Below are positions 4,480 through 48,956 of a stretch of DNA of 64,000 bases, piece after piece. A model generated the notes under the pieces. It was not told the origin of the DNA. It worked only from the letters and a program-made list of their open reading frames with translations, and searched no databases. Numbering within the stretch: the stretch's first letter is position 1; each line of letters starts with the position of its first letter. The stretch is taken from positions 1 to 64,000 of the forward strand of contig DF236987.1 of assembly GCA_000708835.1 (NCBI GenBank), written 5' to 3'. Made by a program: the position numbers and the translations under genes. The stretch comes from Klebsormidium nitens (Eukaryota; Plantae; Klebsormidiophyceae).

Positions 4480-5330
4480 GAACGTACTCTAATTACTAAG
4501 CATCACCGTGTTTATACAAGGCCATGCACAAACTAAGTAGGCTCCGACCGAATCTTTCCCAAGTTCGTTGTGCCTGAATCAATCTCAGCCGGCCGGGCCC
4601 GACCCTTCAATCCCAGGCACTAGCTTGACTTAGTGAGTGACCAGCCCGTGCATTAAGTTAGTGTGCCGGAACTAATAAGGGCCAGGCGCTCGACGTCGGA
4701 CTCACATGTGTGCACATATATGCACTGACCGTCATGACCATGGCATGCACGCGCAGCCCAGCTAGTGACTCGAATCTGCTATACAGTATAGTTTATAGTT
4801 ATATTTATACAAATATATGTACCCGGTCCGGTCGCCGTGTAGTAACAAATATATTGTCGGCCAAGTTCGCATGGTCAGATATAAACAACGTCCGATCTGA
4901 CATTAATCATTCGATCATGATCATGATATCGATGCATGTGCAAAGCTCAGGACGTAATGATAACGGGGCCGGATTGTGGCCGCCCGGGCGTAGTCTTAAA
5001 TTGTTGAGGCCGGTGCATGCGTGCGCACACGCTATGGCAGTGGCATTCAATATGGTTTGCCAAAGAATTACATCGATATGTAAGCTGTTGCGCTGCACAC
5101 TCCATTGGTGACGTTGACGGACCGAACGTATATGGCAAGAGTCCCTTCAAAAACTATGCAATTAAGCCCGGCCCCGTGATACTTACCCCGCAATTTAGTA
5201 AAAGTGCGTTCAGTACTTTGGAAGTTGCATGAAATCAGATTAGACGGCGACGCCTCATGATTGGCGCGGCCGCAGCTAGCCGGTCTGAACATGGAATCCG
5301 TGCATAACAAACTCAAATCGACCCCACTCT
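4480..5330. other. Convergent-junction spacer block 1 (RY-alternating tracts plus GGCC/CCGG islands); boundaries approximate
   Basis: 23-nt perfect purine/pyrimidine alternation at 4703-4725 and 20-nt at 5013-5032. GC islands near 4590, 4825, 4975, 5168 and 5268. No credible ORF. Confidence 0.7.
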
Positions 5331-5517
5331 AAACTTCAACCTCTTCTTCACGTCAATTTGCATCATGATAAAGAGATCCGGCGTTCGTGTAGATTCGTTG
5401 TTTAGGCCCCAGCGACTTGCTTTCCATCGCTTGAGAACATATACTAAAGTTCGCAGCCGCTGCGTGTGCTCTTATAAGCTAGCAGATATCACTTTGAGAC
5501 TTTGACGGTGGCCGTTC

Positions 5518-8500
5518 CTACTCGTCTTCCTCCTCTTCCTCTTCCTCTCCCTCGTCGTCCTCGTCCCCTTCCTCGCCGTCGTCCTCGCCTTCCTCGCCCT
5601 CCTCCCCGGTCGGGCTCTCGGGCACCTCGGGCTCCGGCTTGGGCGGCAGCTCGTTGGACTCAGCCAGGGCGGGCTCACCCTCGGCGGGCTCGTATTCTGT
5701 TTGCACGACGGGGGGCGAGGCCGGGCTGTAGGGTGCGTTCTTCACGCCCCAGCCGATGTAGATGTTGGAGAAGCCGGAAGGGGTGGCGATGGCATAAGCG
5801 CCGGGCCACAGGAGGGACCGGATACACGCCACCTGAAGGACGTAAGGAAAATCAACAAATGAATGCCATCGACTTCGCATCAAGCTTCGAGTGAGCAGCC
5901 CTGCAAAGGGAATTCCATTAGTCCTTCGAAATCGCTCTCGACAGTTTCCTTGAGAAGCATCGTCGATCTTCACGGTTCCCACGCATCACGTCCCTAGTCG
6001 AGACGCTGCGGCTGACCTTGTGCTTGAGCCCGGGTATGTCCGAGCTGAGCGCGGCCGCCCAGGGCTTCCCCCCGGCCGGCAGCTCCGCGTCGTTGTCCAG
6101 CGTGGTGAGCGGCGCGGGCCCCTCCTCCGCCTCCTCCTCGCTCGGCTGCCGCTCCTCCTCCTCGCCCTCCTCCGCGTCCTCCGCCGGCGGGGCCACCCAC
6201 ACCGCGCACCGCCCCTGCCAACACACACAGCACCGTCAGACTCGTCAGAGTTCAGCCGTGATGGTCGGCCTGTAAATGTCCGATTGAGGCATTCTGAACT
6301 GATCGCCAATGGCCGGTGTGAACAAGTGGCACCACATTTTGGTGGTTCTCTCTCGTCTTGGACGCCTTTGTTTCATACTTGCCATTCTGAAAGCGCAAGC
6401 GCTTCCGTTGCTGCAGAGTAACCTGACAAGGCGGCCTCTCTTAATCGTGGAAACCGTTGCATTAGATTCGCTTGTAATGCCGTTTTGCTGCATGTATTGT
6501 GAGGCTGGAGACGGTGTGAGGCTGGAGACGGCAGTCCAATGAAACGGTCTTAAGGCGTTATACCTGCCTTGAGTTTTTGCGTTCGGGTTTCCCATGTCTT
6601 GGCGACGTTTTCTGCTGCATGGCCGTCACGTCTGCACGGGTTGTTTTGAGCCCGCTGCCAGGCGGCTGCCCTGCCGGCCAGCGGTGTTGCGGGTGCGCAC
6701 CTGTTTCTTGATGTGTGGCGTCCTGTGCGCCCAGGCCTCGAGCGCTGCCGCGTCGGCCGCGGCGGGCGCCACGAACTCGTCGTTCTTCTCGAGGCCGGCG
6801 TCCTCCTCGCCGACCGTGAAGTAGCCCGCGGGGCACACCACCGTGCTGCCCGCAATGCGCGCCAGCTGCGCGCGCAAAAAGTGGGCCTCCACGCCGGGGA
6901 AAGGCGGGTACGCGGACACCTCCGCCTAGGGAGACACGAGCAGGAGGAACGGGTGAGATAGAGAATGGAGGACGGACTCTAGTAGGCAGAGCTGATGGTC
7001 AGCGAAGGATTCCTTCCTATGGCAGCTTTCAAACGGTCTTCTGGTAGAGGAAAGCCTTCCGCAGGATATCGGCAATTGATACCACTACAAACGACAGCCG
7101 CTTAGCCACTTCGCTTCACTTCACTGCCAGTGCAGCCAGTGCTTCTGGCACGGTACGAAAGAACCGTGCGTCGTACTATCGAAGTGACACTCCAAGCATG
7201 CACTCAAGCGCCGCTCCAGCGTAGACAGCGTAGAGCGGCCCTGACCTGAAGGTTGCCCGTGAGGAACTTTTTAATGCTGCGGGCCGTCTTGACCTGCAGC
7301 GGCGTCACGTCCGGCAACCGCGTCAGCGGGCCCCCCAGCCGCGTGGTGACCCAGTAGACGCACGCGTTGGCCCCGCTGCGCTCCTCCGGCGGCACGCCGT
7401 CCTGGGGGCGGCCCCACATTACAGCAGCCTCCGCGGCCACAGCCTCCTCCGATTTCTGCACGGGCAGAGACCGGGGGGTGAGAGAGGTGAGAGGGCAGCC
7501 GTCAGGGGTTGCGCAGGATGCCAAAGTGCCTAAAATCGTTCGTAAGTCGATTCAAAATGCTGTTGGAATTGACGTTGGTACATCCGAGGCCTCCACACTC
7601 TGACTGCGCTGTCCTGTGCTGTTCTCACTGTTACAACAGGCTCATCTCAGCATACTGGCCGGACCTTTTCTTCATCAGCACTTCTTCCAATCAAAACATA
7701 AGATCGGCCTAGTGAGGAGACTTCGAAGTCTCGTGCTCATCCTCACTGTACTTCGAAGCAGCACTACGAGACCCCGAACAATCTATTTCGGGAAATGGGG
7801 TTATATTTCTGGTACTGTTGTGCTAGTGTACCAATGCAGTTTTGCAGACTCGTGCCTCAACAAGCTCGCCATTGAAACACAGAGTAGTTCTGCTGCTACT
7901 CTCCATCAAGCAGTGCCTTCTGAGAAGGAAGGAGTCCCCGGCCGTGTGCGCACCTCTTCCTCCTCGCCCTTGGGCGTGCTCTCAAAGACGTAGTAGTTGG
8001 CGGTGGTCCCGAAAAGCTTGCCAAAGAAGCGCACGCTGGCGCAGTTCTTGGCCGGGTCCTGCCCCAGCTTGTGCAGTGCCAGCGCCACGCGGTGCATCTC
8101 GCCTGCGCCCAGCCCCACCCCGCATGCTGCGTACAGGCTGGCGTCCAGCAGCACGTCCTCCGCGTCATACTCGTTCAGCGGCTCAGCCTCCTCCGCCTCG
8201 CCCGTCTCAGCGTTAATGGCCGGCTCGGGAGTGCTGCAACCAGGACAGATTTGTAGCTGCTCAGTGCCGGTCTCATACCCAACTTGCCGCACCACAAGGG
8301 TCCAGTCCCTAGCTCAGAGATCGTGTGCCCCAGTCGTAGGTGGTATACTGCAGTCTGGCAAGACATGACTCAGAGGAGAGGAGATGGGACTTGCAGAGCT
8401 GGCGAAAACTTGACATGACAGTTCGAGTTCTAAATCCGTGGGCTGGAGAGCCAAGCTGGTCAATTTGGCGGCCCCAGTGGCTTGCGCTCGTTTGTATACG

Positions 8501-9474
8501 AGCTTAGCCCACTTGATTGAGATCCTTGAGGATGGACGCGCTGCTCCCAGGCACATTTGCGGGCAGTGCGAGGGGCCAGCAGGGAGCAGCCTACCTGTAG
8601 AGCTGCAGGGTAGCCGTGGCCGCTGCGATTGAGGTCGCATCGGGGCTGCTTTTCTTGGGTGCAGTCTCCTTGATTGAAGGCGGTGCCGTCTTCTTAACCA
8701 GCAGGCTGGTCTCCAGAATGTCTACCGCGTTGGCGGGCCGCTCCTCCAGGATCTGCAAGAATCCATATAGCTTAGGAACATGCGTAGCTGCACACCAGGA
8801 TGAAGCATGAGGACCACTCGGGTGGGGCTTAGACCTGACCCACAATTGTAGGGCCCCGCTTGTAATGCTGAATTGGTGAAGGTAAACCATATCTAGTGCA
8901 GGGCTTGAGGAACCATGTTCGACCTACTCACATTGTCAAAGGCCAGTGAGCCAGCGCCTAATGTTAGTTTCACCTGCTTTCCAGAAAGCCAGACATGCAT
9001 TCCTAATCCTAGCCAATCAGGTGCTCTAGCTAAATGACCCTTTGCGACTCTTGCTCAGCAACGTGCATTTTATAGGACTTAAACCTATTGTGCGACTGGT
9101 GACAACGTTCTCTGCAGCTAAACCATGGCTGGATAACTTGTGGCCTTGCAGAGCCCCTCCAAAGCAAGCTCCAGCCTTGAGCACTCAGCTCACAGGAGTC
9201 ACAGGAAGCCTAAGCTATGATGTACTGTGGTTCGGTAACTTGTCACACCCTCATGGACATCAAATGATTTGACGTTTGGAGCTCAGTTAGATAGTCAGAC
9301 TCTGATTGCCCATGATCCGAGAACGTGCAGGCTTCTGCCACTTGCGCTCTGCAATGTTTGACTCACCCTGTGCACCACGGAGGTGAGGTGGTCGAACACG
9401 CTGGAGCCCGCTGTGCTGCTGCTTTTCTGCAGGAACGCCACTGCCTCGTCCACGCTGCCTGCAGCGGGAGCCAT
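5518..9474 (-). CDS. RSP4/6: Flagellar radial spoke head protein 4/6 (RSPH4/6 family), 7 exons
   Basis: Exons 9474-9367, 8752-8595, 8233-7954, 7455-7246, 6925-6701, 6214-6017, 5832-5518. Motifs SVFDHLTSVVHR-ILEERPANAVDILETSLLVKK, VRFFGKLFG, EERSGANACVYWV, RSLLWPGAYA, FSNIYIGWG and an acidic tail. A probable 5' UTR intron acceptor lies near 9504. Confidence 0.93.
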
Positions 9475-10631
9475 GCTTGGGGCGACCAGGGCAGCTGTGG
9501 CCCCTGTCAACGGAAGCAGTCACTTTACGAGCTAAAGAGAGCACGAGCGAAGGGAAAGCTGCCCACTTAGTGCTGCGCCCTCCACAGTCTTCCTGACGAT
9601 TCAAATGTCGCACGTCGACAATGTGCAAACTGCATCAGTGGGAAGGAGAGCAAGATCGTCATTTGAGATCTTTGTGATGAACATGGTAAAAGGACACCAA
9701 GGACTATGCCTCAACCTGCTGCGGCCTTTCCCTGCAGGCAAGCTAGCAACAATAGCACGATGACAAACACTGGATACAACAGTAGGTCAGAAGGTACTGG
9801 TACCTGGGTAGAGTCTTTGATTGCTGGGGAGAGCTCAGAGAAGCACAGTACATTTTCAAGTACCTACTTGGTACAGTACGCGTTCAGAAGATAACGGTTC
9901 CTCGGAGATGATTTGGGTTTCAATAGAAATTCCGCCTTAAACAAGCGCTGTCGCCGTAGAGGACTCTCTCCGCGCGCGAGCAGTTTTGCTGGTCATGTGC
10001 AAGGGCAGAATCAACAAATGAATGGGAATACGCCGGAAGTACACGTCCTGAACTTGAGCATGGCGGAACTTGGCAGAACCGTGCATCTGGCATTGAGTCG
10101 ACTGAATTGATCTCCAGTTCCTCAAAAGCCGGGTTCGCCACAGATATTCCCGCCCCATGCATAGAACATGGGCTGATTTCATATGCAGCGACAACCATTG
10201 CACCAGGCTGCATCTCGATGAATAAGCCGGCCGACCATTGGCAGATGTTGACCAACGTGTCTGATTACACGTTCATAACGTAATTCGCTGGTTGATTAGC
10301 ATTTTTCCAGCAAGCTCCTGCTTGCCTGGTTTGATGCAACAAGCAGAACGATTGCAACACAGCATTGCCACTTTTCAGCCTTCACGATTGTTTCTATACA
10401 AGCCCGCAACTGTTTTGGGAACGCTCTTTTTCGAAACTTGGACAATAACGTAGATCACAGTCGCAGATCTGTCAATCCTATGTTCTGAACACTGTGGGCA
10501 TGAACTAGAGTCTTGCAGTCGTGCTCCTAAGTTGTCTGGAGAATGCTTCCAAGGTGCCGCCTGGAAGCGAAATCAGTGTGTCCAGTACAGCATTGCCCCC
10601 ATCGGCACTGCAGAGCCGCCTGCGTGCGGTG

Positions 10632-13600
10632 ATGGGGTCCAGCCTGGCAGTGGCGGGGGGCCCTGCAGCGGGGCCCCACGAGGCCCACAAGCTGCACATC
10701 CTGGCACACACAGCACGGCCGCTGCCCAGCCCGCACAGCCCCACCAGAGTGACCAGGGCCTTTGGCAAGCTCAACTTCCACAAGATCGTGAGAACGCTCG
10801 TCAAACCGTGGGCCATGTTGCATGTTGCAGACCAGAGTGCATAAACATCTCACAATGATGCTGCTCAAGATCTGGCCCTTGCCCTCCACGAACCGGCAGC
10901 TGGAGATCTCACGTAATCTGGTGCTTCCATTGCAATGCAAACCGTTGACTATACATGAGAAGACTCACTCAGACGTCTGGAGTTGGGTTTTTGCCTGCCT
11001 GCTTTCTCTGCCTCACCTCCTCATCAGGTTCGAAGGCTTCCTCACTCAGCCGGGGCCGTGCCCCGCCTTCATGGGCCTTTGCCACCTCCTGTATCTTTCA
11101 TCTAGAGTTGCACGTTTTCAAAATTGAGTTTTGTTCCCCCTCTGCCCGCAGGCCGAGCTGCTGCACAGCAGCGACCTGGCGGTGCGCCAGAAGGCCACCA
11201 AGGCTGCTAGCGAGCTGCTGGCCACTGCGGAGAGCAGGGCCGAGTGCCTCGCCATTCCAGGTGCGCATGCGGCCAGGCCCTTGCCGTCAGGATTATGCCT
11301 GCTTGTTGCTTTCGTGTTCTGCCGCCGTCAATCAGTGGGACTAGCATCCTAGCAATGAGCTCACAACAACTTCGTACCCGGTCAGCTACTTGCAACTTCG
11401 TCAACGTCTTCTACCACATATCTGAATTGAAAGTGTAAACGGCTACTTCCGGCCTGCCGCATCGTACTGGCTCACTAACTCACAGAGGCACTGGGCTCCA
11501 GCCGTTTTTTTGACTGAACAAGGTAAGAATTGCATTGCAGGCGTGACGGGCACGCTGGCGGGTGCGCTGGTGGATGGTGACCTGGTGGTGCGGCAGCAGG
11601 CGGCGCAGTGCATGGTGCACATTGCGGGCAGCCAGAAGGGCTGCGCCGACCTGTGCGACAATGGGGTTGTGCTCAAGCTGGTGGCCATGGTGAGGCCACG
11701 CACCACACTGCAAACGTCCCTTGATTCGTGTGATACAAGATGGTGGAGGAGGCACATAGTTGACAGGACCACCTCGGACTCGACTTTGAGAAAGTACACA
11801 GCCGGCCAGAGTGAGCCAGCTGCAAGTAGTAAAACATGAAAGGAGCAAAGACCTCGTGCCAACTTAGACGGCTAGAAGAATCGAGGGACATCAAAAGCCT
11901 CTACGCGCAACGGCTCATCTTGACGAACTTGCCGGTGCGATCCCTCCTCTGTAAAGTCCTTGCTTGTACTGATGTGTGAAGAGCCCTTTCCTTGTCTGCA
12001 GTTGACGGATGATGACGGGAAGATTCGAACAACTGCTTTTGAAGCGCTAGCAGCGGCTTCCAGCCAACCGAGAGGTAGGCGACCGTTGATACAGACTATA
12101 AACTGGGGTCAAATGTCTCGAATGGAGGTTTCGAAGGTCATGGGCATTGTACATGGTCGCTTCTCTGGTCATTTGTGCACCTCGAACCCCGATCCCGTTC
12201 TCGAAGAGTATTCCGCGCCCAAAATTGTTTGTTGAAAGACGAACTACGCTTCTTGTCTCGCCTCACCGAACCTCGTCCCTCGCGTGCAGTGCGTGAGATC
12301 CTGATCGGCGGTGGCTGGCTGGTGGGCTTGCTGGTGCAGCGCGCGGGCGTGGAGAGCGGGGAGCGGGCTCGGCATGCGGTCGAGATCCTGGTGCAGTGCG
12401 CGCAACACGCAACGCAGGGGGACGCGGCGCGGGAGCAGACTCTGGCGGCCAAGGGCGTGCCGGTGGCGGTCAAACTGCTGGGCAGCCCCGATGCGGCGCT
12501 CAGGGAGACGGCGGCACGGCTAGTTGCGCAGCTTGGGTGAGAGCCCCTAGCGGGCTTAATTTAATGCTGAACGGTCGAGAACGGGTCCGAGCCCGCATCG
12601 GCGCAACTGCTATCCATTTGTAAGAGAGCGGTCACACAGTGATGCGCACCACGTCCTTTCGATGGAGGCGCTAAGAGGCGCAAATGTAAGGGCTTGTTTC
12701 TTGCATCATGATGGCCGGACTATCTTTAAAACAAGGTTGCATGCGGACGGCAAAACGAATGACTCTCAAACGAGCAATAGCGCATGAGTCGAGGCTTTTC
12801 GTTCCTACTTGAAAGTATGATCGGATTAGTGTCGTTCCTCGCAACGTCAAGCTTCAAGATCCGAGTTCCGGCCCCATTTACGGAAGCAATGAAGCCGCTT
12901 AACGTCTTCCCAAAGCATGGTCAATCTTTTTTCAAGATATCCGTTTACGTCTCCTTCTCAGCAGACGAGCTGCCTTAATTTTCTTTGAGCTGTCCGCTTG
13001 TTGACAACTTTCCCTCATGCTCACGCCGCCGGCTGGCCCCCGCAGTGTGTCGGAGGGCGGCAAGGCGGCATGTGTGGCAGGAGGGGCGATGCCGCCTCTG
13101 GTGGTGGCGCTGCAGGACAGCAGCGTCAGGATGCGCACCGCGGCCGCGAGCGCGCTCATGAGGTGAGGCACGTCGAGCAGCATGGGACTACGTCCGGCCC
13201 GAACACGCTCCTGAGGAACCCCGCCCGCCAATTATCATGGGCCAGGGCAACTGCAAGAGAAGGAAATTAGAATAGCGTTGTCCTGGTCCTCTCCGTGAGC
13301 GAGAAGCGGGCAAGTGCCGCCGTCGGGTAACGAATCAAGGTTGAGTTTCTTCTCGACCCAAGACAACGTTCAAGTTTCCAGAGATTCAGCTCGTGAACAA
13401 GATTGCTCCCACCGCCTCTGTCCTCGTGTTCACTCATGCATCTAGGAAAACCTGTACTAAAACTACATCACGTCTGTTACCTGATTGGTTCGACTTACGA
13501 ACCGTCGGCCGCTCGGCGCAAAGCCCCTCTCATAGCACTGACGCGTGCTGTGTTTTGCGTGCCCAGCCTGACGGTTCCCTTGGTGGGCAAGGAGGCCTTC

Positions 13601-14284
13601 GTGGCGGCGGGCGGCCTGGCGCACCTGCCGCCGCTGCTGGACGACAAACAAGGCACGCTCTGCCTGCACACCCTGCAGGTCAGCCACGCCCCGGACTCCC
13701 AGAGAACTCAGGGAAACGCGATACACGGAGCGACTCGAGCGCCCGTCTACAGATAATGGGGCCCGGATCAATCTGGAAATCTAGGACTGTCCTGTAAGCA
13801 AGATGAAACCCTGCGAAAAAGTTTGTCACGTAAACGTCAGAGCGTTGAAGTAAACGTGCTTATAATCTCTCGTCCCGAGCAAACCTAAAACGGTCAAGAA
13901 TTTGGTATCAAAAGCCAAAGTTCGCCATCCTCGCACGTTCACTTTTACCATAAAAGGAAGGACATCCTGAGGCTTTTAAAGGACAATGTCAAGCCGCCAG
14001 ACCGAAGTGGTTCGTAGCAGGGAAAACTTTTGGTCAAGGCTTTTTGGGTACATGGAGAAGCAAGTTCAAGCGCCTCACAGGTGATCTTTGTGTCCCCTCA
14101 CTTCTCCCTTTCTGTGTGCTGTGTGCAGCTGATCGCGAACCTGGCGGAGCTGCCGGCCGCCCGCGCGGGGCTGCGCGGCGCGCTGCCGGTGCTGGAGCGC
14201 ATCGCCGCGGGCAGCGGGAGCGGCATCCACAAACGGTTTGCAGCGCAGGCCGTGCAGCAGGTCACCTTCCAGCACGCAGGCTAG
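10632..14284 (+). CDS. RSP14: Armadillo-repeat radial spoke protein 14 (RSPH14/RTDR1 family), 8 exons
   Basis: Exons 10632-10787, 11152-11260, 11541-11689, 12002-12074, 12290-12537, 13046-13162, 13567-13678, 14129-14284. N-terminal HILAH..P..PTRVTRAFGK, ARM/HEAT-like repeats and C-terminal LIANLAELPAAR...KRFAAQAVQQVTF match recalled Chlamydomonas RSP14. Confidence 0.85.
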
Positions 14285-14789: not shown

Positions 14790-15790
14790 ATTTCCGATCA
14801 ACTGCCTCAATACTTACATAATAACATGGACGGTTGCGCTAGCCCCGCCTGGCCCTGTGGGCGTGCTTGTATAGAGAGTCCGATCTCAATGCGACCGACG
14901 GTTAGTGAGTCACTCCGGATGAATCCGATGCACTTGATGATGCAGGCGCCCAGCTCAGCTAGGGGCGATCCATATGCCGTCATGCATTGTATATCCTATC
15001 AACCGTGGGATTACCGTCGGCCGGCGGGCCGCGGGCCCCGGGCCGACCACCTTATAGTCACGATCACTAGGATATGCTTAAACGCGTATATACGGCGTAT
15101 CCTCTTGATTCTTTCAAACGACTAAGCTATCGCATCATGCATGCATTGCACCTCCCGCGGTCCATAATCAGGCCCGCGGCCGGGCAAACCCTGTCCTTTT
15201 TTACCACTTCTAGCTTATAAGGTCCGGAATTGGTGTACGTACATATAGATACAATCAAAACCTTGGCGATGGGCTTGAAAAACGGGCGCGGCCGCCCGAG
15301 TTACCGCTCGAAGTGAGCCCTTATGCATACGCATATATGGTTGGATTACTTCAGGCTCGCGAACTAGCAAGCGCTGTGTTGCTCATGATCGCAGTTGATT
15401 TGTACGGTAATCAAGCACCTTATAAACTCACTTTTTGGTGCGACCCAGTACCGCGGCCCAGTATGGTACCAGTATGTGACAGTTGTTCGAGTCGGAGTGG
15501 CGGGGAATGGGATATGCATGCTTGTGGATCCACACTTGGATTTTACAATTCCGACCAGTCCAGCCTCGCATGGATCGGATCACAACAAGCAGGTTGCCGC
15601 AGAAGTGCCGTCTGAGATTGCAAGACACAATTTGTCGCCAAATTGCCAGTGCATCGGGTTGGTTACCACAAGCGTCCATTGTCAATGGGACGCTTAACAC
15701 GGTTGAATTCAACCAGGTGTGACGCAATGGTTGGGGAGATCAAGGAGTCTGGTCAATCTGCATGCGCGTGCTTTGATCATGGCCACAGCT
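14790..15790. other. Convergent-junction spacer block 2; boundaries approximate
   Basis: RY tracts at 15233-15247 (15 nt) and 15322-15339 (18 nt). GC islands at 15018-15048, 15170-15185 and 15284-15299. Confidence 0.7.
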
Positions 15791-15877
15791 CAGCTCGCTA
15801 ACTACACCTCTTTTGACAATGTTCCGCATTGCGAAAAGAAGACCTGCCCAAGCCCCGTGGCACGTCGAGGTGCTGCG

Positions 15878-19738: not shown

Positions 19739-20952
19739 GCTAGTACACTTTGATTGCTCGCACGTGTGGACCCCCAGATACCCGACTTATGGCTTGTGCA
19801 AACCTGATCAAGTGCCTCCTTGAAAGAGAGCATGCGCCGGACCATGCGCACACCTTATCGCTGCGGCTCTTGACGACTGTTGGAGGAGTCGTCCTTTTCC
19901 TGCGCCAGCTTGATGAGCCTCCTGAGCAAGTAGCTAGCTGGGCCGCTGCGGCGCTGGCAGTGGCATGCACCACTTCGCAAGGAACAGGCTCGCGTGTAGC
20001 CTTAGCCTTAGGCCAAAGCACCACCCATGCCAATGCCAATGCCAATGGATGCCCCGGCCGGGCCCTAGCTTGCATGCAACTGTTCCAAGAAAAGTTTCCT
20101 TCGGGCAGAATCTTGGACTGGGGCAAGTTACAACCGGCAGCGTTTCCAGCAACGGCAAAATCGTCGTGACTATCCTCTAGACTGAAATAGCCGGCAAGAA
20201 GTGCCGCCGAATTTGCCGTTAAAAGACGCCAGCTTGAACATTCTGGAGGTTCATTTTGGGAGATAAAATTTGCAGGAGGCAACTTCTCAGAACGAAAGCT
20301 GAGGCTCATTTTCCAGCTGCTGGCACCAGCTGAGCGGCTAGCTGCGAGCTGGCGAAAAGGCCCTTCCGCATTTCGGGGCCAAACAAGACCTGATAACAGC
20401 TACATGTCTGCCTTGCTCTGCCTTAGACCCTTCTCTATGACGCATTTTCTGCTTCAAGGTTTGCGCAGGCCTGGACTTGGAGCAGAATTGAATGCTTGAT
20501 CAGTGGACTCAACATTGGAAGTTGCAAGCAGGAACATGAGCAATTTTTGATCGCATTGGCTGCAGAAATCAGATGGACTGAAGCAGACAAGCTTTACGGC
20601 AGCGACTTGGTAGCCAAGTGCAGCCAAGAGTTTGCACAAGGATAAAGAGCGGCTGCAAATGCCGCACAGCATTCATTGTATTGCAGGCCCTCAAGTTGAG
20701 AGCATCACAATTGATTGAACATTGAAGCACCGCCCACTCAACACGTTTGCTGCTGGACATTCGCTGGTCATTCCAAGCCTCATGAGCACCAGAACATTGG
20801 GGAGCTGTGGTTCAAAGGTTGCATCCCTCCCATTGCTATCAGCACCACTTACAGAGCAGGGTCGCAGTTTCGTTTCCGTTTGGAGGCCCTCTTTGAGCAA
20901 GCCCAGCCCAGGAGGTCCAACCAAGTCAACGCGGAGAGCTACTCAAACAGTA

Positions 20953-25449: not shown

Positions 25450-26520
25450 AACCTCGAGTCGTTATAGTGCACATGGGGGGCCTAGGGCGTGACACAGGCG
25501 CTCAATGCACGCGGAATCAGGCCCGAGGGCGTACGGCATGTGCATGGTCGGACTGCAACTTGCATGCACCTATACAATATATCATGGTATGCGTGACGCA
25601 CTACCCCGTATTTCTCGATGTAGTAAACAGTTGAATAGTAAGCATTTTGGAGTACGTCACTGAAAATCCTAACTCAGATTAAAAATCGCCCCTTCCGCGC
25701 ACGTATGGCCGTACCCACCCGGCCTAACGCCCTCACCAACCGTCCCTACCGGCCCGTCTCCGTTACTGGCATGCTTTACCCCATCATGGACGGTCCCACT
25801 GCGCAGTTCGATCGAGCGCATTCTAACTGAAATTAAGACGACGAAACCCGGCCGGGTCACCTTTTCTTCCGCACGAGGCCCATATGCATGGCATATTTTT
25901 GACTCAAGCTCGCGCGCTCGATTCGATCCTTCAGAACCGAGTTCCTGCAATTCCCTAGTTGGATCTGATATCGAAAGAAAGCTATATAGCTGATCGAATC
26001 TGCATATTGATATCATTGGGACGACAGTATACATGATTCAGGAATTCAACCGTCCGGGCCCACTGCGTGGCCCGGCCAGTTATTAGATTCCGCTTGTACA
26101 TATGTTAGCAATAAGCTAGGACGATATATTGAGCCTTTCCGTCAAACGCCGACTCTTTGAATATGTACTTAAAGATCTCCTACGGCCGGGCCGACCTTCC
26201 GAAGTTTGCAAAAATTCAGCTGAGGCGTCGATCTGGCACGCACATGCATAGGTAGCATGATGACAAAAGTGCGCAATGATCTGCATAAAAACTTTGAAAG
26301 CGGCACCGGCGGGGGTTCAAGCCGGGTAACTTGAAGTGGCTCAACCCAGCCCGTCCTAGAACGTGTGATGCAAGTGCCACTTCGTACCTGTATGTACAAT
26401 CTGCGTCAACCAATTCCTTTATAATTCCAAAAGCATACGCAGGCTCAGCGCAACTTACATAATGGGTGTTGTTCAACCAACATATTGGCAATCACAGGGA
26501 CCGCACGCATGCGCGGCAGA
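25450..26520. other. Convergent-junction spacer block 3; boundaries approximate
   Basis: RY tracts at 26236-26250 and 26502-26515. GC islands near 25720, 25850, 26050-26080 and 26183-26196. Confidence 0.7.
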
Positions 26521-32402: not shown

Positions 32403-33149
32403 TCTGGATTCAATGCGTCACGCTAATCAGGGAGAATAAAAATTGCCCTGCAATTCTTTGGGGGAAAAGAGACGCTTCAAGTTCTCAAATCTCAGAGGAG
32501 CATTGCTGGCATTGTTCCGATTCGATCCTGAACGTCTTCGCTTGAACTTCAGTTGAAGTTGTCAATATCGAGCTGCATGAACAGCCGACTGCAAAATCGG
32601 CAGTGCTCACAAATTGAAACAGTATTGGAGTCTGGCAGTAAATTTGATGAGTATATTATAGCCGTTTAGAACCGAGCCTCTTCTCAAGGCACTTTCACAA
32701 GAGCTCGCGTACTCATTTCTGGTGAGTCTGGAATTCCTGAGGTGTCCTTGCCGCTGATCTCGACCCAAGTCTGCCCTCTTTCACGCGCCCTGCAAAAGGC
32801 ACACCAGGAGCAGCAGGCGCTCTGTTGGCAGGGGTCCCGCATCGTCTGACAAGATGGTGAGGGCTCTTTCCTTCTCTCGGGCCTTTTTCCAAGGCATGAA
32901 AACATTTGCCCCTCCGTCATCACGGTGACGGTTGTGTATGACGATCATGTGGTGAATCTCTGGTGTTCTTGAAGACGCCGGCGTCGTAGGCATTCTCGCT
33001 GTTTTATTCTGGTGCTGGCTTCGAAAAGACGGAGTCCGAGGTCTTGAGGATTCTACCGCCGGCTGCTTCAGGCTCGCTTTTATGGTAGTCCCGCTTTGCA
33101 GCGCAGTAGCTCGTGCAAGCCAGGAAAAGTCACGCCTCACTGCAGGCTG

Positions 33150-33310
33150 AAGCCCAGGCTGGACATAGGGTTTCTTTCAAAAGGGTTCTCATGTCGAGTT
33201 GTCAGTTGACTTTTCGTTTACGCAACAGCTATATTCCTCCCTCCTTGGAACAGCCCAAAGTGCAACCTTCTGATGCATATTCCTGGGCAAGGGCTTGCAG
33301 TCGCCCACAT
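33150..33310 (+). promoter_or_regulatory. Telo-box plus site II (TGGGC/GCCCA)-like elements upstream of RPS17
   Basis: TAGGGTTT (reverse telo-box) at 33166-33173. GCCCA/TGGGC words near 33152, 33253, 33284 and 33303. This combination is established for plant ribosomal protein promoters. Function is not shown here. Confidence 0.55.
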
Positions 33311-33340
33311 TTTGCCGGGCAGTTAGGAGGTTAGAGAGCA

Positions 33341-36237: not shown

Positions 36238-36279
36238 GGTGTTCAATTGGAATTGGAATACACGGCTTTTTGGCTTGAT

Positions 36280-37040
36280 TGCCGAATGATGGTTACCGAG
36301 TTAGCGTGTACTTCGGGTATCCGGCTCAGCCTGGCTGTCTGCAATGATGAACGATATTCATCGCCATGTGTGCAAGGTTTGATCTCGATACGCGAGCCGC
36401 GCACTGAGTCACTGCGAAAAGATGTTCAATTGCAATCACCTTGCGTGCTGGCACGCCGCGCACATCACATCGATCAGCCTACTAGCTATGAGCAGGCTTC
36501 ATGTATGGGTAAGGGCCGACCACCGCCGCAAGCTTTATAGGTGCGGTCACTGCAAGCAAGCATAATGATGTGTATGCACTTCACTTTCAAGCTATAGCCG
36601 GTGCATGTATACGCGCAACTGTCAGTGTCGGACTATAGTCTTCAGACAGAAACTTTTCGACCATGCATACCGCAAGTACGTGGTGAGCTAGGGCAATTCC
36701 TTGCCCGGCCCGGTGGGCGGGCTCATTCCTTGCTCGGCGGGCTGGCTGAGTCTGCCATTCGATCGTATATTCGCTTGAAACAAGTCGGCCGTGCAAGTTG
36801 CACACCATGACATATGGTACCGCTTGCCATGCAGCGTGATGCAAGTCTGAGCTAGTCGCGATTATGAAGATTGATGGCGACGTAACTGTCGGCAATAGGC
36901 TGTGCACGTCGCCCACATGCATGTCGGAATGAAAGCGGCGTTTTATGGTCTGGCAGCATGTCGGACTGCATATGCAGTTTCATGGCTGTACAAGACTTGA
37001 CAGGCCTCTCATGCACTGAGCCGAGTGCGCAGCTACGGCC
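36280..37040. other. Convergent-junction spacer block 4; boundaries approximate
   Basis: 17-nt RY tract at 36601-36617 and repeated CATGCAT/TGCATATGCA words. GC islands near 36515 and 36705-36720. Confidence 0.65.
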
Positions 37041-37190
37041 AAAGCGTCTTTTCTGGCACCTGACCCCGTCGCCTAACCCCTCAGACGGAAAACTCTTGAA
37101 TCTAACTACACAGTTGTCCAGAGAAGGATGCACCTTCTCCAACTCGTTCTGGCGTTTATGCTACGAAGCCTCTGACTATCTCTCTAAAAC

Positions 37191-43100: not shown

Positions 43101-43236
43101 TTCGGAAGTCAAAGTGATTGCCTCTGAGAAACCCGCCAGTCAGACAATTGCGCAACGGACTCCCCAGCGATCGCAAAGGCCCGGCCGATGAGAGGGGACG
43201 TACGAGACACAGTTGAGTGCCAGTGACAGCTTGCAT
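37191..43236 (-). CDS. cysK: Cysteine synthase / O-acetylserine (thiol)lyase, bacterial-fungal CysK-like type, with organellar transit peptide, 11 exons
   Basis: Exons 43236-43012, 42692-42615, 42372-42304, 41877-41677, 41164-41045, 40654-40579, 40427-40339, 39846-39739, 39164-39069, 38184-38094, 37390-37191. Motifs [25 protein letters not shown] (PLP lysine), [33 protein letters not shown]. Confidence 0.94.
37906..38015 (-). repeat. About 110-bp dispersed intronic element, copy A (inverted relative to copy B)
   Basis: Its reverse complement aligns end to end with 39260-39369 (GACTAA...GCACCCG..CCACCCTAA..CCCCAAACTAA.CTCACCCGTCC...GGCCCTTA), roughly three-quarters identical by eye. Confidence 0.85.
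39260..39369 (+). repeat. About 110-bp dispersed intronic element, copy B
   Basis: Aligns to copy A in inverted orientation. Shares the exact 25-mer GCTCCGCACCCGTACCCACCCTAAA (39289-39313) with 45868-45892. Confidence 0.85.
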
Positions 43237-43399
43237 TGAGCTGCACCTCTCTAGCTGACTGTCAACCAACGGAATATTGTGCAAACCGGCTTGCTCTTTC
43301 TGGCTTGAAAATAAGCTTTTATATGTAGCAACTGAGCAAGAATTCTGCACGATCTTCAGACTTCAGGGGCCAATTTTGCCAGGGCAGATGCTTCCCTTC

Positions 43400-43426
43400 T
43401 GAATTAGGGTTGAAAACCCTAATTCA
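43400..43426. promoter_or_regulatory. Perfect inverted repeat of telo-box-like half sites in the 250-bp cysK/TRM10 bidirectional promoter
   Basis: TGAATTAGGGTT-GAA-AACCCTAATTCA: 12-bp arms (43400-43411 and 43415-43426) with a 3-nt spacer. Contains AAACCCTA at 43414-43421. Confidence 0.7.
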
Positions 43427-43486
43427 AGAACCCTCCATTTGACTGGTAAATTCTGCTTTGCAACTTTGGCCCAGGGTCCGGCAGGA

Positions 43487-46400: not shown

Positions 46401-47844
46401 ACGGGTAATCATCAGCAATAAATGCAAACCCCATCAGTCGAATCTGCAGAAAGACTCGCTCGCTTCTCTAAGCAAAAACGAAAACAAGTAATTGTCAAAC
46501 TCGCTCGTTCAAGGTCCCTGCCCCAGCACTACCAGCGGGACACGGCTCTCAGCGTCAAGGGCCTTTACCTGATGGGCCTGCAATAGTTGGGCTTAGCTTT
46601 CTTGTCGCTGTGTGCTGCAGCGGCTGACGTACGACAAGGCGAAGTCACAGGGCATTGCGATGGCTAAGCTGCCCATTGGCGAGCACCTGCGGCTGGCGTC
46701 GTCCAAAGTGCTCACCGTCAACCATGTGAGCGGGCAGCGTGCATCATATGCGCGATCGAGGCTTTGATGTGGAACTCGTTTTGACAGAAACACAATTGCT
46801 CGTCCCCGTTTCTTTTTCGGCGCAAATTCACGCTATTCGCATGTTGCAAAAGCGATTCACGAAATCATTGACGTGTCTTTAGAAAGACGAGGAAGAGCAG
46901 GCAAAGCACGGCGCTTACAATTCATCGGTTTCTTTGTTCCTGCCTTATCGAGGAACATCACGAGTACCTCGTATAAATCTAGATTCGACGACTTACTGCC
47001 GTACACAGCTTGCTCTTTTGGGACTGAGACGAGGTCTTTCCTGATACCACTGCTTTCGGCAAAGTCACTTCGTAGAGGTCTTTCAAGCGATCGCTTCTGG
47101 TTTGCGAAGCCAAGATTTTGGCCTGGGCTGTTAAGAGCCGGTAGATCTTTCTTGACGGCAAGGCTTTGAGGAGCACCGGCCACTGCGTCGTTCCCAGGGA
47201 CCGGCCAGACTAGGAGTGCTCCTTGGTTCCTTTATTTCTAGATAGTGTGAGGGATTTTGTCTCTCTCCCGTCTGCCAAGGACGCAACAGCTTGATGTACC
47301 GGTAATTGTCGCAGCTGACCAGCACCGAACCTGTTCTGTTTGCTCCACGCTTCCCGTTACGAAGTAAAAAGCTATAAAGTGACCCGAGGTACCTTTGTGT
47401 TCTGAACGAGGCGCTGAGCGAGCATTACGCTGCTTGTCGATGCAGGTGGTGGAGCTTTTGGTGCGGTATAAGGAGCTGAACGACTGGCAAAAGGCCCTGG
47501 AATTGGTGGTGCCCACCCGGAAAAGGGCGGGAGACGAGCAGGACAGGTTGGCAACAAGGCCGCGAGTAGAAAGCAGCGAAGAAGAAGGGGCCCGGAAAGA
47601 CGCGGATCCGGAAGCTGGGGGAGCAGAGGCAGTAGGTTCAGAATTGAAGGAAACCGCGAATGCGAGAGAAGAAAGTAGCCGTCTGGAAATGGTTCAGGAA
47701 GGTGCGACGTTGGAGCGCGTACATATGGTGCCTGGGGCAGGTTCAAATGGAGGCTTAGCAAACGGTGATTCAGACGGACGGGAGAAGGATGTCGAAGGGT
47801 TGACGTCAGACCAGTGCGAACACTTGAAAGACGAAGGTGTGTGA
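43487..47844 (+). CDS. TRM10: tRNA (guanine-9-N1)-methyltransferase Trm10 family (SPOUT), 6 exons
   Basis: Exons 43487-43799, 44566-44717, 45133-45276, 46008-46160, 46621-46725, 47446-47844. Motifs MSKNQLKK, LVIDLEFGDLM, KSLMQQLMYSY, LVYLTADA, IYIIGGIVDRNRHK, AKLPIG, VLTVNHV, DWQKALELVVPTRK. Confidence 0.94.
45855..45925 (+). repeat. Partial third copy (C) of the intronic element, in TRM10 intron 3
   Basis: Exact 25-mer at 45868-45892 shared with copy B, followed by a similar ...AAA.TAA.C.CACCCGTCCCA stretch. Confidence 0.8.
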
Positions 47845-48099
47845 CGCATATGTGGCCTCGATTGTAAGTTGCCTGTATCATTACCTCAGGTCGTCTGAGT
47901 ACTTCAAGGAAAGGCTTACACCGCTAGTGCTGAAACTGGATTGCATGAGGTTCTTGACAACATGATGATCTGCAGGCAGCGCTGCTGACGGTACTGAGCC
48001 GGCGCCTGGCACTTGCATGGCCGCTTGCTTGCCGGGCGGCCTGCCGTTGCCTGCACACAGGCATCGCCGCCCGGGCCTAGGATTGTAGGAGTTTTCTAA

Positions 48100-48920
48100 A
48101 ACATATGACACGCGAGCATGCACTTACATAGCTGCGATTCCGGACTCAGTGAGTATATGCATTGAATTTTCTGACTGCAACGGTAGTCTAGAATGACTAC
48201 TTATATATACATGTCACATATATACGTGCCCCAGCTAGCTCCGCTTACGGGTATGTGCCTACCGTATGCACATGATAGCATCGGCCACTGGCATGCTAAT
48301 ATCATGCGCAGGCAGTACGTAAATATACGTGCTTGAAGCAGAGGTGTGAACTTTGCAGGCGGCCGGCTCAGTGCAGACGCGCGCACGGTCGAAATAATGA
48401 TGCACCATATCTTCAATTTAACGAAAGCTCAAATTCTCAAGATTGTGAACGATTGTCCGCCAATTGTACTTCAAACTAACTCTGCAACTGCCGAGATCGC
48501 GCGAGCGTGCCATTCAACACACCTCTATATTCATCATGGAAATGTTGATTCTGCCACTTGGCCAACCAACGTACCGCCAAAGAAATTGACAATTGACAAT
48601 TGCGGCTGCCTCAAGTCGCAATTAGAATGCGCAAAAAGGCAAAGTCTGGATAAGATTATGCCACCGTCGACAACGTCCACGTTTACAGCTGGCAACAACG
48701 TTCAGTGGCAGCACTATATACTATTGCAAAGAAACAAACTATGTCACCAGTCAAGCATTGCAACCTAAGTTATCGATCCTATAGACCAGATGTCGAGGCT
48801 GCTCAACCTACACCGCATCAGAACATATACATACATGCCCAGTCGAGAACTGGTCACTGCTTTGTCACAGTGACCACAAGTCTGCCGGCCTAAAGCCTAA
48901 CGTGCTTCAACAGCTTTCGA
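48100..48920. other. Convergent-junction spacer block 5; boundaries approximate
   Basis: RY tracts at 48202-48214 and 48215-48229 (28 nt with one break), CGCGCGCACG near 48378, GGCGGCCGGC near 48358. Confidence 0.65.
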
Positions 48921-48956
48921 TACAGAGTGGTGCATCTATTTCCTCCCATCACGGAA

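What the first reader, a model, noticed from the sequence alone, without database searches (positions are those of the whole stretch)
4480..48920. A distinct class of spacer DNA at every convergent gene junction (candidate boundary, terminator or methylated-island system)
Seen: all five fully sequenced tail-to-tail junctions (about 4480-5330, 14790-15790, 25450-26520, 36280-37040, 48100-48920) carry 0.7-1.1 kb with the same unusual texture. They have 13-23-nt perfect purine/pyrimidine alternations built from CATG, TGCA, TATA, ATAT and GTAC, interrupted roughly every 100-240 nt by GGCC/CCGG-rich islands. The blocks do not align to each other as copies of one element and lack credible ORFs. By eye I did not see this texture at divergent junctions (9475-10631, 19739-20952, 32403-33340, 43237-43486, 51153-51892) or in introns. 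The sixth convergent junction (tRNA/kinesin) looks partly similar but holds the gap. Established: 5mC deamination turns CG into TG/CA, so GCGC-rich DNA decays to TGCA/CATG/TATA. In kinetoplastids a modified base (J) marks convergent strand-switch regions for termination. Inference: these are long-lived, position-specific modified-DNA or chromatin islands between colliding transcription units, with the patchy GC islands possibly reflecting nucleosome-phased mutation or protein footprints. The survival of CCGG amid apparent CpG decay is unexplained. I am not aware of a description of this, but I cannot search the literature.
Basis: partly seen in the sequence, partly recalled or inferred. Interest (0 to 1): 0.8.

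Follow-up and report, generated by a model that had tools for sequence, protein, structure and literature searches.

The report
Palindrome-rich gaps between converging genes

Summary
All five convergent junctions carry 0.45-1 kb tracts with about 11% palindromic tetramers. Gene bodies and divergent spacers have about 6%. The excess survives local dinucleotide-preserving shuffles (508 observed, about 360 expected, z about 10). Divergent spacers, RNA-verified introns and all 11 gene bodies show none.

The higher-order signal is 4-nt dyad symmetry, not purine/pyrimidine alternation: 15 of 16 palindromic tetramers exceed expectation. There is also a gap-specific 2.2-fold excess of 4-nt tandem duplications. 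TpA and CpG are not depleted in the tracts (o/e about 1.0, against 0.5-0.86 elsewhere).

At one junction, RNA contigs place the tract between the two poly(A) sites. In relatives the core cannot be aligned although introns are 64-80% identical, yet the same texture recurs there.

The methylation-decay reading fails: there is no CpG loss, no CpG hypermutability, and Ts/Tv is 1.0. GC-rich patches exist but are not periodic.

My best reading (0.45) is a hypermutable Pol II termination gap shaped by 4-nt-scale break repair. The main rival is a selected two-way terminator.

The scan found this before on other pieces of the same genome, which those earlier notes call Klebsormidium nitens. I found no description of it in the paper library.

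The parts
4480..5330 (.). Convergent gap 1 (M24 peptidase + | radial spoke head -). The hyperdivergent core is about 4600-5062.
   Evidence: Palindromic tetramers: 110 observed, 65 expected, z 6.9. The core has 15.1%, o/e 1.51. The core is 49-57% identical to L007, against 64-80% for introns.
4618..4700 (.). In-place inversion of about 80-90 nt relative to the close relative L007 (7996-8090), at the edge of the core. An inverted repeat with 12-nt arms lies beside it in L007.
   Evidence: Seen. It is the only reverse-complement segment found in a 4.3-kb alignment.
14790..15790 (.). Convergent gap 2 (ARM-like + | DUF6816-like -).
   Evidence: Palindromic tetramers: 100 observed, 73 expected, z 3.9. 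Palindromic hexamers: 38 observed, 18.5 expected. Density peaks at 14900-15400.
25450..26520 (.). Convergent gap 3 (FAD-binding/PNPOx + | IspD -).
   Evidence: Palindromic tetramers: 125 observed, 78 expected, z 6.2. This is the strongest window in the unbiased scan, p 1.4e-8.
36280..37040 (.). Convergent gap 4 (RPS17e + | PALP enzyme -). This is the weakest block.
   Evidence: Palindromic tetramers: 79 observed, 61 expected, z 2.6. Palindromic hexamers are not significant.
47907..48615 (.). Convergent gap 5 as defined by RNA (TRM10 + | PEX11 -). This stretch is untranscribed in steady-state RNA.
   Evidence: No contig from four RNA-like runs lies here. Palindromic tetramers 12.4%, o/e 1.44, z 4.1, TA o/e 0.92. 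Alignment to L009 stops at 47805 and resumes at 48646.
48615..48642 (-). PEX11 poly(A) site cluster.
   Evidence: Contigs start at 48615, 48632, 48639 and 48642. One carries an unmatched run of 26 T before 48642.
47762..47907 (+). 3' end of the TRM10 transcript, from the ends of RNA contigs.
   Evidence: Contigs end at 47762, 47868, 47888 and 47907. The preceding intron is 46725..47446, GT..AG.
53243..53900 (.). 3' flank of the kinesin gene (-), next to the assembly gap. It carries an attenuated copy of the same signature.
   Evidence: Palindromic tetramers 8.8%, o/e 1.43, z 3.2, TA o/e 0.88. The tRNA 3' flank at 52010-52619 shows none (z -1.0, TA o/e 0.65).
It makes PEX11(-) and kinesin(-) tandem neighbours as far as Pol II genes go.
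   Evidence: 47.1 bits. ARAGORN missed it.

Best explanation
The tracts are the non-transcribed spacers between the poly(A) sites of converging Pol II genes, the zone where both polymerases terminate. I think they are hypermutable DNA whose texture is a mutational equilibrium, not a set of conserved sites.

Inferred cause: recurrent breakage there, most plausibly from the torsional stress, polymerase collisions or R-loops of a two-sided termination zone.

Inferred mechanism: error-prone end joining repairs the breaks and leaves marks on a 4-nt scale.
- Filling in 4-nt staggered ends gives 4-nt tandem duplications. This is the signature reported for trapped topoisomerase II in yeast.
- Hairpin-type or snap-back ends give 2+2 palindromes.
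- Small inversions also occur.

Turnover is fast, so the sequence is lost between species while the texture is re-created. The same turnover, or the lack of whatever depletes TpA and CpG elsewhere, leaves TpA and CpG at their unbiased level.

Shown: the position, the lack of RNA, the statistics, the fast turnover, and the lack of preferential conservation of palindromes.

Inferred: that breaks occur there, which enzyme makes them, and that no selection is needed.
For: - Position: at junction 5 the tract lies between the two mapped 3' ends. The alignment to a relative breaks exactly at those ends.
- Turnover faster than introns: the core is 49-57% identical with 12-45% gap columns, against 64-80% for introns and 92-100% for exons. 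One in-place inversion was found, and only inside the gap.
- Palindromic tetramers are no better conserved than other tetramers (0.39 against 0.41, p 0.75), yet both species carry the same number (107 and 110).
- The excess is generic. Fifteen of 16 palindromic tetramers exceed the Markov-2 expectation by 1.19-2.08 fold. Both the alternating and the RRYY types are enriched, while non-palindromic words with the same RY pattern are not.
- The scale is 4 nt. Palindromic hexamers are only 1.1-fold over the expectation built from tetramers. Inverted-repeat excess falls from 2.2-2.3 fold at spacers of 0-1 nt to about 1 beyond about 9 nt, with bumps at 6 and 8.
- 4-nt tandem duplications: 46 observed, 21.2 expected (z 4.4), in the gaps only. 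Units of 2 and 3 nt are not enriched. Introns (9 observed, 8.9 expected) and divergent spacers (25 observed, 21 expected) show nothing.
- Duplicated palindromic tetramers occur at 11 sites in 4.5 kb, against 13 positions in 53 kb elsewhere.
- The same texture occurs in four loci of relatives, o/e 1.20-1.75.
- Published context: trapped Top2 gives NHEJ-dependent de novo duplications, most often 4 bp (bioRxiv 10.1101/2020.05.03.075358). Convergent genes are topologically stressed and unstable (PMC3273821).
Against: - No break, topoisomerase or repair data exist for these sites.
- Filling in staggered ends explains tandem duplications but not isolated palindromic tetramers. That part rests on a second, assumed end chemistry.
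- The analysis of templated indels between the window and L007 was inconclusive.
- The conserved flanks of gap 1, which are 76-91% identical, also carry the excess (o/e 1.44-1.45). Hyperdivergence and palindromy are therefore not strictly coupled.
- Only one junction has RNA-defined borders.
- No clean tandem junction could be examined.
- Selection on an aggregate property would give the same lack of site conservation.
Confidence: 0.45

Rival explanations
1. Selected two-way termination or insulation zone. The density of short dyad-symmetric and TA/CATG-type words is kept by selection, because it stops Pol II arriving from either side or excludes or positions nucleosomes. The property is maintained while individual sites turn over, as proposed for the palindromic UAUAUA element of yeast bidirectional termination zones.
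For: - The tract lies immediately downstream of both poly(A) sites, with no RNA across it.
- TAYRTA, the yeast efficiency-element consensus, occurs at 4.0 per kb in the blocks against 0.42 per kb elsewhere. CATGCA/TGCATG occurs at 5.1 against 0.63 per kb, in all five blocks.
- The property is kept in relatives despite sequence loss.
- The signature is tied to Pol II 3' flanks. It is present beside the kinesin 3' end but absent from an RNA-free stretch beside the tRNA and from the divergent spacers.
- The blocks are strand-symmetric.
- Yeast precedent: bioRxiv 10.1101/2022.11.02.514956 and PMC6420913.
Against: - Nearly all palindromic tetramers are enriched, including the GC-rich ones, which does not look like one factor's site.
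- Palindromes are not preferentially conserved.
- Divergence above the intron level needs extra mutation or positive selection.
- Unlike in yeast, the elements lie outside the mature 3' UTRs and the zone is 450-700 nt long.
- There is no excess folding energy.
Confidence: 0.3
2. Default neutral composition. The gaps are simply the only unconstrained, untranscribed DNA, and the texture is what this genome's background mutation produces when transcription-coupled repair and RNA-level selection are absent.
For: - TpA and CpG o/e return to about 1 only in the gaps.
- TpA also relaxes in the equivalent spacers of distant relatives that lack the palindrome excess (L001 and L002).
- There is no strand asymmetry.
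Against: - Other RNA-free DNA does not show the signature. Divergent spacers have TA o/e 0.50 and no palindrome excess. The stretch 52010-52619 has TA o/e 0.65 and z -1.0.
- Unbiased neutral drift does not produce palindromes 1.45-fold above local di- and trinucleotide expectation.
Confidence: 0.08
3. Modified-base or special chromatin island. A DNA modification or heterochromatin mark is targeted to convergent junctions and shapes their mutation pattern.
For: The tracts are position-specific. K. nitens has CG, CHG and CHH methylation, with CG methylation in gene bodies and excluded from promoters (PMC5890265). This applies only if the genome is K. nitens, as earlier notes of the scan say. Palindromic tetramers are typical methyltransferase targets (my own knowledge).
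Against: There is no CpG depletion, no CpG hypermutability and a low Ts/Tv in the gaps. There is no GC-island periodicity. The enrichment is not restricted to particular words.
Confidence: 0.07
4. Replication-related element. The gaps are origins or fork-convergence sites, with dyad symmetry and raised mutation as by-products.
For: From my own knowledge, not tested here: yeast origins are over-represented between convergent genes, and origins can be mutation hotspots. The AT-rich and GC-rich patchiness of the blocks is at least compatible.
Against: There is no direct evidence of any kind. Every junction has a tract, which would mean an origin about every 10 kb.
Confidence: 0.04
5. Decayed transposon or MITE debris, or accumulated excision footprints.
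For: Hairpin-forming cut-and-paste transposases leave short palindromic footprints (my own knowledge). Earlier notes of the scan report such elements in this genome.
Against: The blocks share no alignable sequence with each other or with the rest of the window. Their ORFs have no Pfam hit. The density of palindromes (11-18% of positions) is far above what sporadic footprints should give.
Confidence: 0.03

Closest known systems
Yeast bidirectional termination zones centred on the palindromic UAUAUA efficiency element (bioRxiv 10.1101/2022.11.02.514956), and short inverted repeats at yeast poly(A) sites (PMC6420913)
   Same: Palindromic TA-rich words of the TAYRTA type are concentrated where converging genes end. 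The composition is strand-symmetric. The proposed role is to stop transcription from both sides.
   Different: In yeast the zone is about 120 bp, lies inside overlapping 3' UTRs upstream of the cleavage sites, and rests on one motif family. Here the zone is a 450-700 nt RNA-free gap downstream of both poly(A) sites. Fifteen of 16 palindromic tetramers are enriched, including GGCC, CCGG, AGCT and TCGA. There is also a 4-nt duplication excess and faster-than-intron turnover.
Topoisomerase II break-repair signature: NHEJ-dependent de novo duplications, most often 4 bp (bioRxiv 10.1101/2020.05.03.075358)
   Same: There is a gap-specific excess of 4-nt tandem duplications, with no excess of 2-nt or 3-nt units. 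The location is one expected to accumulate positive supercoils.
   Different: That signature was defined in yeast reporter genes with trapped Top2. Nothing here shows Top2 cleavage, and the signature does not by itself produce isolated palindromic tetramers.
Short template-switch mutations and spacer inversion between inverted repeats (PMC5453318, PMC8604942)
   Same: One in-place inversion of about 85 nt lies beside an inverted repeat in the gap. Dyad symmetry is generated locally.
   Different: Template switching typically gives arms longer than 2-3 nt and hairpin-capable repeats. Here the excess is essentially at tetramer scale and folding energy is ordinary.
Base J at kinetoplastid convergent strand-switch regions
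   Same: It is a mark specific to places where transcription units converge, and it is linked to termination.
   Different: J is a chemical modification between long polycistronic units. Here single spliced genes alternate in orientation and only a sequence texture is seen. No modification data were available.
Plant RY element (CATGCA), bound by B3-domain factors (my own knowledge)
   Same: CATGCA/TGCATG is 8-fold enriched and occurs in all five blocks.
   Different: It is one of many enriched palindrome-derived words. Its count matches what the tetramer frequencies predict (12 and 11 observed, 9.6 and 10.2 expected).

Membership tests
Decayed methylated CpG island (product of 5mC deamination) | CpG depleted, with a compensating TpG/CpA excess relative to neighbouring DNA | tested here: not met
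   CG o/e is 1.07 in the blocks, 0.67 in divergent spacers and 0.86 in the rest. TG/CA are 1.22-1.26 in the blocks and 1.15-1.32 elsewhere.
Decayed methylated CpG island (product of 5mC deamination) | Raised C-to-T change at CpG, and a transition-dominated spectrum | tested here: not met
   Comparing the window with L007, the CpG to non-CpG transition ratio is 0.8-1.1 in the gap flanks. Ts/Tv is 1.0 there and 1.42-1.48 in genes.
Decayed methylated CpG island (product of 5mC deamination) | 5mC present on the tract | not testable with these tools
   This needs the public MethylC-seq data (GSE104474, named in PMC5890265).
Base-J type convergent strand-switch terminator | Long polycistronic units converging on the region | tested here: not met
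   Single spliced genes of 2-6 kb alternate in orientation.
Base-J type convergent strand-switch terminator | A modified base on the DNA | not testable with these tools
   Only sequence was available.
Yeast-type bidirectional termination zone | Enrichment of the UAYRUA / UAUAUA efficiency element | tested here: met
   TAYRTA occurs at 4.0 per kb in the blocks and 0.42 per kb elsewhere. TATATA is 22-fold enriched on small numbers.
Yeast-type bidirectional termination zone | Elements lie within overlapping 3' UTRs, upstream of the cleavage sites | tested here: not met
   At junction 5 no RNA contig covers 47907-48615. The 3' ends do not overlap.
Yeast-type bidirectional termination zone | Nucleosome depletion | not testable with these tools
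   This needs MNase or chemical nucleosome mapping.
Transposable element or MITE relic | Several alignable copies, or a transposon protein domain | tested here: not met
   No hit longer than 22 nt between blocks and none elsewhere in the window. The ORFs have no Pfam hit. The whole genome was not searched.
Z-DNA-prone alternating purine-pyrimidine tract | Long RY-alternating runs | tested here: met
   Sixteen runs of 12 nt or more, against 3.8 expected from in-block shuffles.
Z-DNA-prone alternating purine-pyrimidine tract | Alternation as such enriched beyond base composition | tested here: not met
   Non-palindromic alternating tetramers have o/e 1.02 against Markov-2, while palindromic ones have 1.42. 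RRYY-type palindromes have 1.58.
Hairpin or cruciform terminator | Stem-loops with excess folding energy | tested here: not met
   DNA folding z-scores are -1.28 and -0.56. The inverted-repeat excess is gone beyond a spacer of about 9 nt.
Topoisomerase-II-type break-repair scar | Excess of 4-bp tandem duplications | tested here: met
   46 observed, 21.2 expected, z 4.4, in the gaps only. Units of 2 and 3 nt are not enriched.
Topoisomerase-II-type break-repair scar | Top2 cleavage concentrated at the sites | not testable with these tools
   This needs CC-seq or END-seq.

The most novel reading that the evidence does not exclude
A lineage-specific process keeps rewriting the DNA between converging genes on a 4-nt scale. 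A two-fold-symmetric, 4-nt-staggered cutting activity (topoisomerase II or another dimeric nuclease) would be drawn there by termination stress. Its repair products, palindromic tetramers and 4-nt duplications, would in turn make the gap a better substrate and a better two-way Pol II stop. The result would be a self-renewing, sequence-free terminator or insulator. That would be a new kind of genomic element, defined by a maintained texture rather than by conserved sequence.
Probability: 0.15. Interest if true: 0.85.

Novelty: new variant of a known kind. Interest (0 to 1): 0.62.

Why it matters
How closely packed eukaryotic genes stop transcription before it invades a converging neighbour is poorly understood outside yeast and animals.

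Here a streptophyte alga marks every such junction with a texture that can be scored from sequence alone. It has sharp borders at the poly(A) sites, and it is re-created in each lineage while the sequence itself is lost.

If the texture is a repair scar, it is a natural read-out of where termination stress breaks DNA and of which end chemistry repairs it. If it is selected, it is a composition-coded bidirectional terminator that could be used in algal and plant constructs.

Either way it gives a simple genome-wide predictor of 3'-3' boundaries in this lineage. It also corrects a tempting but wrong methylation-decay reading.

Tried and rejected
- Gene orientation from self-trained codon models and from splice-donor counts was too noisy. 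I used Pfam hits on exon ORFs and RNA contigs instead.
- The 321-aa DUF6816-like ORF is not on record as a called gene, so official gene calls for the window could not be fetched.
- I looked for a clean Pol II tandem junction and found none that could be verified. The candidate at 58.2-59.9 kb lies inside one kinesin gene: the motor domain is at 61181-61594 and the orthologues in L001-L004 are collinear. L010 is not syntenic beyond TRM10.
- There is no strand asymmetry of non-palindromic words between the two halves of the gaps, and so no sign of directional RNA signals.
- GC-island phasing and 10-11 nt periodicity are absent.
- There is no excess hairpin or cruciform potential.
- Templated insertions (direct or inverted copies of flanking DNA) among indels between the window and L007 were inconclusive. 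A few direct duplications appeared and no clear inverted ones.
- The excess of overlapping palindromes is mild: D.rcD.D hexamers 87 observed, 69.9 expected.
- The distant relatives L001 and L002 show relaxed TpA but no palindrome excess.
- Four literature searches for a prior description found none in the held library (and, for the methylome, 34).

Full report
WHAT THE WINDOW IS. The window is an intron-rich eukaryotic sequence of about 53% G+C, with one assembly gap at 52620-53242. Earlier notes of this scan call the genome Klebsormidium nitens. I did not verify the name independently, and what I take from the K. nitens methylome paper depends on it.

Pfam hits on exon-sized ORFs, with profile coordinates running in the expected direction, give the gene order. 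Spliced RNA contigs support it for TRM10 and PEX11. The order is: M24 peptidase(+), radial spoke head(-), ARM-like(+), DUF6816-like(-), FAD-binding/PNPOx(+), IspD(-), RPS17e(+), PALP enzyme(-), TRM10(+), PEX11(-), a tRNA(+) at 51893-51999, and one long kinesin gene(-) from about 53.6 kb to beyond 63.7 kb.

The window has 28 purine/pyrimidine-alternating runs of 12 nt or more. Sixteen lie in the five blocks, which are 7.1% of the window. In-block shuffles predict 3.8.

In 400-nt bins, palindromic tetramers peak at 9.5-14.5% in all five blocks, against a window mean of 6.2%. The few other high bins are GC-rich coding DNA.

Pooled, the blocks hold 508 palindromic tetramers:
- Whole-block dinucleotide shuffles predict 338, and each block has z between 2.6 and 6.9.
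- Shuffles confined to 30-50 nt, which keep the local patchiness, predict 358-366, z about 10.
- Divergent spacers have 259 against 248 expected. RNA-verified introns have 104 against 107.
- All 11 gene bodies have o/e 0.90-1.07.

An unbiased sliding scan puts its strongest windows in gaps 1, 3 and 5 (p from 1e-8 to 3e-4). Only the gaps combine a palindrome excess with TpA o/e of 0.9 or more. The blocks share no alignable sequence with each other or with the rest of the window, and their ORFs have no Pfam hit.

WHAT THE TEXTURE REALLY IS.

Dinucleotide level. The gaps differ from everything else. TpA o/e is 0.96, against 0.50 in divergent spacers, 0.57 in the rest and 0.54 in introns. CpG o/e is 1.07, against 0.67, 0.86 and 0.82. 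ApT and GpC are at 1.3. Purine-purine and pyrimidine-pyrimidine steps are depleted (0.80-0.96).

Above the dinucleotide level, the signal is dyad symmetry and not alternation:
- Against a Markov-2 expectation, palindromic tetramers are enriched 1.42-fold (alternating type) and 1.58-fold (RRYY type). Non-palindromic words with the same RY pattern stand at 1.02-1.07.
- Fifteen of 16 palindromic tetramers are above expectation, by 1.19-2.08 fold.
- The outer pair is complementary in 38.7% of cases when the centre is self-complementary, and in only 26.2% otherwise.

The scale is short:
- Palindromic hexamers are only 1.1-fold above what the tetramers predict. Odd pentamers are 1.28-fold.
- Inverted repeats with 4-nt arms fall from 2.2-2.3 fold at spacers of 0-1 nt to about 1 beyond about 9 nt, with bumps at spacers 6 and 8.
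- Single-strand folding energy is ordinary, with z -1.3 and -0.6.

A second gap-specific feature is an excess of 4-nt tandem duplications. There are 46 against 21.2 expected (z 4.4). Units of 2 and 3 nt show no excess, and introns and divergent spacers show nothing. A third of the duplicated units are palindrome-type, such as doubled TGCA, GGCC, GTAC, TCGA or AGCT, at 11 sites across all five blocks. This explains the same-base correlation at distance 4 (1.17) and the excess of palindromes offset by 2 nt.

GC-rich patches are real in three blocks. They are irregular, 43-304 nt apart, and show no autocorrelation peak. The two halves of the gaps show no strand asymmetry.

WHERE IT SITS RELATIVE TO TRANSCRIPTS. 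I laid four RNA-like public runs from four studies on 46700-52600. They are Logan contigs that hold about half of the sampled words and carry spliced joints.
- The TRM10 transcript ends at about 47762-47907.
- PEX11 transcripts begin at 48615-48642, and one contig has an unmatched run of 26 T there, which is its poly(A) site on the minus strand.
- Nothing lies in between.

That 709-nt RNA-free interval has 12.4% palindromic tetramers (o/e 1.44, z 4.1). The flanking transcribed last exons have 5.8-7.3%, which is not significant.

The caveat is that contigs show presence, not absence, and unstable read-through RNA would not be seen.

RELATIVES.
- L007 is a close relative, an ENA contig about 80-85% identical. 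It keeps the radial-spoke/M24 junction. Identity along the pairwise alignment is 92-100% in exons, 64-80% in introns and 76-91% in the gap flanks. Across 4600-5062, where palindrome density peaks at 15-18%, it is only 49-57% with many gap columns.
- L007's own gap is as palindrome-rich as the window's: 12.6%, o/e 1.75, z 7.2.
- One segment of about 85 nt (window 4618-4700) is inverted in place. It is the only such event in 4.3 kb.
- L009 is a second species, a Logan contig about 70-74% identical. It aligns up to 47805 and again from 48646, exactly the PEX11 poly(A) site. Its unalignable gap has 10.0% (o/e 1.45, z 3.9).
- Two loci of a further relative, L008 and L010, show a weaker excess (o/e 1.20-1.24).
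- Two distant loci, L001 and L002, show only relaxed TpA.

Within the aligned parts of gap 1, palindromic tetramers are no better conserved than other tetramers (0.39 against 0.41, p 0.75). Both species nevertheless carry the same number, 107 and 110.

Decay of methylated CpG predicts CpG loss, CpG hypermutability and a transition-rich spectrum. None of these is seen:
- CpG o/e is highest in the gaps.
- C/G-to-T/A changes at CpG are as frequent as at non-CpG sites, ratio 0.8-1.1.
- Ts/Tv is 1.0 in the gap and its flanks, against 1.42-1.48 in the two genes.

The published K. nitens methylome reports CG methylation in active gene bodies, excluded from promoters, with CHG and CHH methylation on transposons (PMC5890265). 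That fits the mild CpG loss I see in genes. The passages I read say nothing about these gaps. Whether the gaps carry any modification cannot be decided from sequence.

IS IT CONVERGENCE OR THE 3' FLANK? The window has no clean tandem junction. The nearest case is the kinesin 3' flank. Because the tRNA is a Pol III gene, kinesin(-) and PEX11(-) are tandem neighbours for Pol II.
- The 660 nt next to the kinesin 3' end, up to the assembly gap, have the signature in attenuated form: 8.8%, o/e 1.43, z 3.2, TA o/e 0.88.
- The RNA-free 600 nt beside the tRNA have none: z -1.0, TA o/e 0.65.
- The divergent spacers also have none.

This argues that the texture belongs to Pol II 3' flanks and not to untranscribed DNA in general. 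It rests on a single case interrupted by an assembly gap.

INTERPRETATION. The shown facts are these: a generic excess at tetramer scale, no preferential conservation of sites, divergence above the intron level with indels and an inversion, re-creation of the texture in each lineage, and restriction to Pol II 3' flanks.

They fit best with a termination zone that is hypermutable and whose repair leaves 4-nt-scale marks (confidence 0.45). Filling in 4-nt staggered breaks, the reported outcome of trapped topoisomerase II (bioRxiv 10.1101/2020.05.03.075358), would give the 4-nt duplications. It would turn a palindromic tetramer into a doubled one that contains its shifted partner. That matches the joint enrichment of CATG with TGCA, GGCC with CCGG, AGCT with CTAG, GATC with TCGA, and GTAC with ACGT. 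Convergent units are known to be topologically stressed and unstable (PMC3273821).

This step is inference. Isolated palindromic tetramers need a second, assumed end chemistry, such as hairpin opening or snap-back synthesis (my own knowledge).

The main rival (0.30) is selection for an aggregate property that stops Pol II from both sides, as proposed for the palindromic UAUAUA element of yeast (bioRxiv 10.1101/2022.11.02.514956; PMC6420913). TAYRTA is 10-fold enriched here. But the zone lies outside the mature UTRs, and nearly every palindrome is enriched. The two readings are not exclusive.

NOVELTY AND EARLIER WORK OF THE SCAN. Three earlier notes on other pieces of this genome report palindrome-dense convergent junctions. 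Two follow-ups called the feature real, shared with relatives and of unknown cause. My results agree with them. They add the refutation of CpG decay, the tetramer scale, the 4-nt duplication excess, the coincidence of the borders with poly(A) sites, and the 3'-flank case.

Searches of the paper library found no description of such tracts in algae or plants. I file it as a new variant of a known kind (palindrome-rich bidirectional termination regions), with the mechanism unresolved.

Noticed in passing
window 1-52000: Ten consecutive Pol II genes strictly alternate in orientation (+ - + - ...), so every junction is either convergent or divergent and none is tandem. With random orientation, nine alternations in a row have a chance of about 1 in 500. 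I did not check whether hidden tandem genes exist inside the longer units (26.5-32.4 kb and 37.0-43.2 kb).
   Followed up: partly
window 51893-51999 (+): Rfam finds a 107-nt tRNA gene, long for a tRNA, so probably with an intron or a long variable arm. It scores 47 bits and is followed by a run of T. ARAGORN misses it. It sits about 200 nt upstream of the PEX11 5' end.
   Followed up: partly
window 48995-49318 (-): The last PEX11 intron (CT..AC on the plus strand) seems to lie in the 3' UTR. The Pfam match to the end of the PEX11 profile (positions 167-221 of 222) is encoded at 49300-49515, so the exon 48642-48995 would be entirely untranslated.
   Followed up: no
L007 1-6060 versus 6224-13090: This ENA metagenome contig looks chimeric. 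Its left 6 kb carries bacterial-type genes (LysR, TctC, rhodanese, hydrolases). The right 7 kb is the algal radial-spoke/M24 locus.
   Followed up: no
window 54501-55000 and 63001-63500 (kinesin coding region): Two coding windows also show a nested-palindrome excess (p 6e-5 and 3e-4), but with normal TpA depletion. Long GC-rich palindromes such as the 12-mer at 55185-55196 occur there. This may relate to the exon palindromes that other notes of the scan report.
   Followed up: no
window about 48585-48612: A short 7-nt tandem repeat (unit TGACAAT) lies just before the PEX11 poly(A) sites. It accounts for the whole 7-nt signal in the tandem-duplication test.
   Followed up: no
L010 2897-3004 versus window 51892-52003: The tRNA is 86% identical in a relative, but there it lies upstream of TRM10 instead of beside PEX11. 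The gene that converges on TRM10 in that relative shows no similarity to PEX11 or the kinesin. Synteny around this junction is therefore not conserved, yet the gap texture is present there too.
   Followed up: partly
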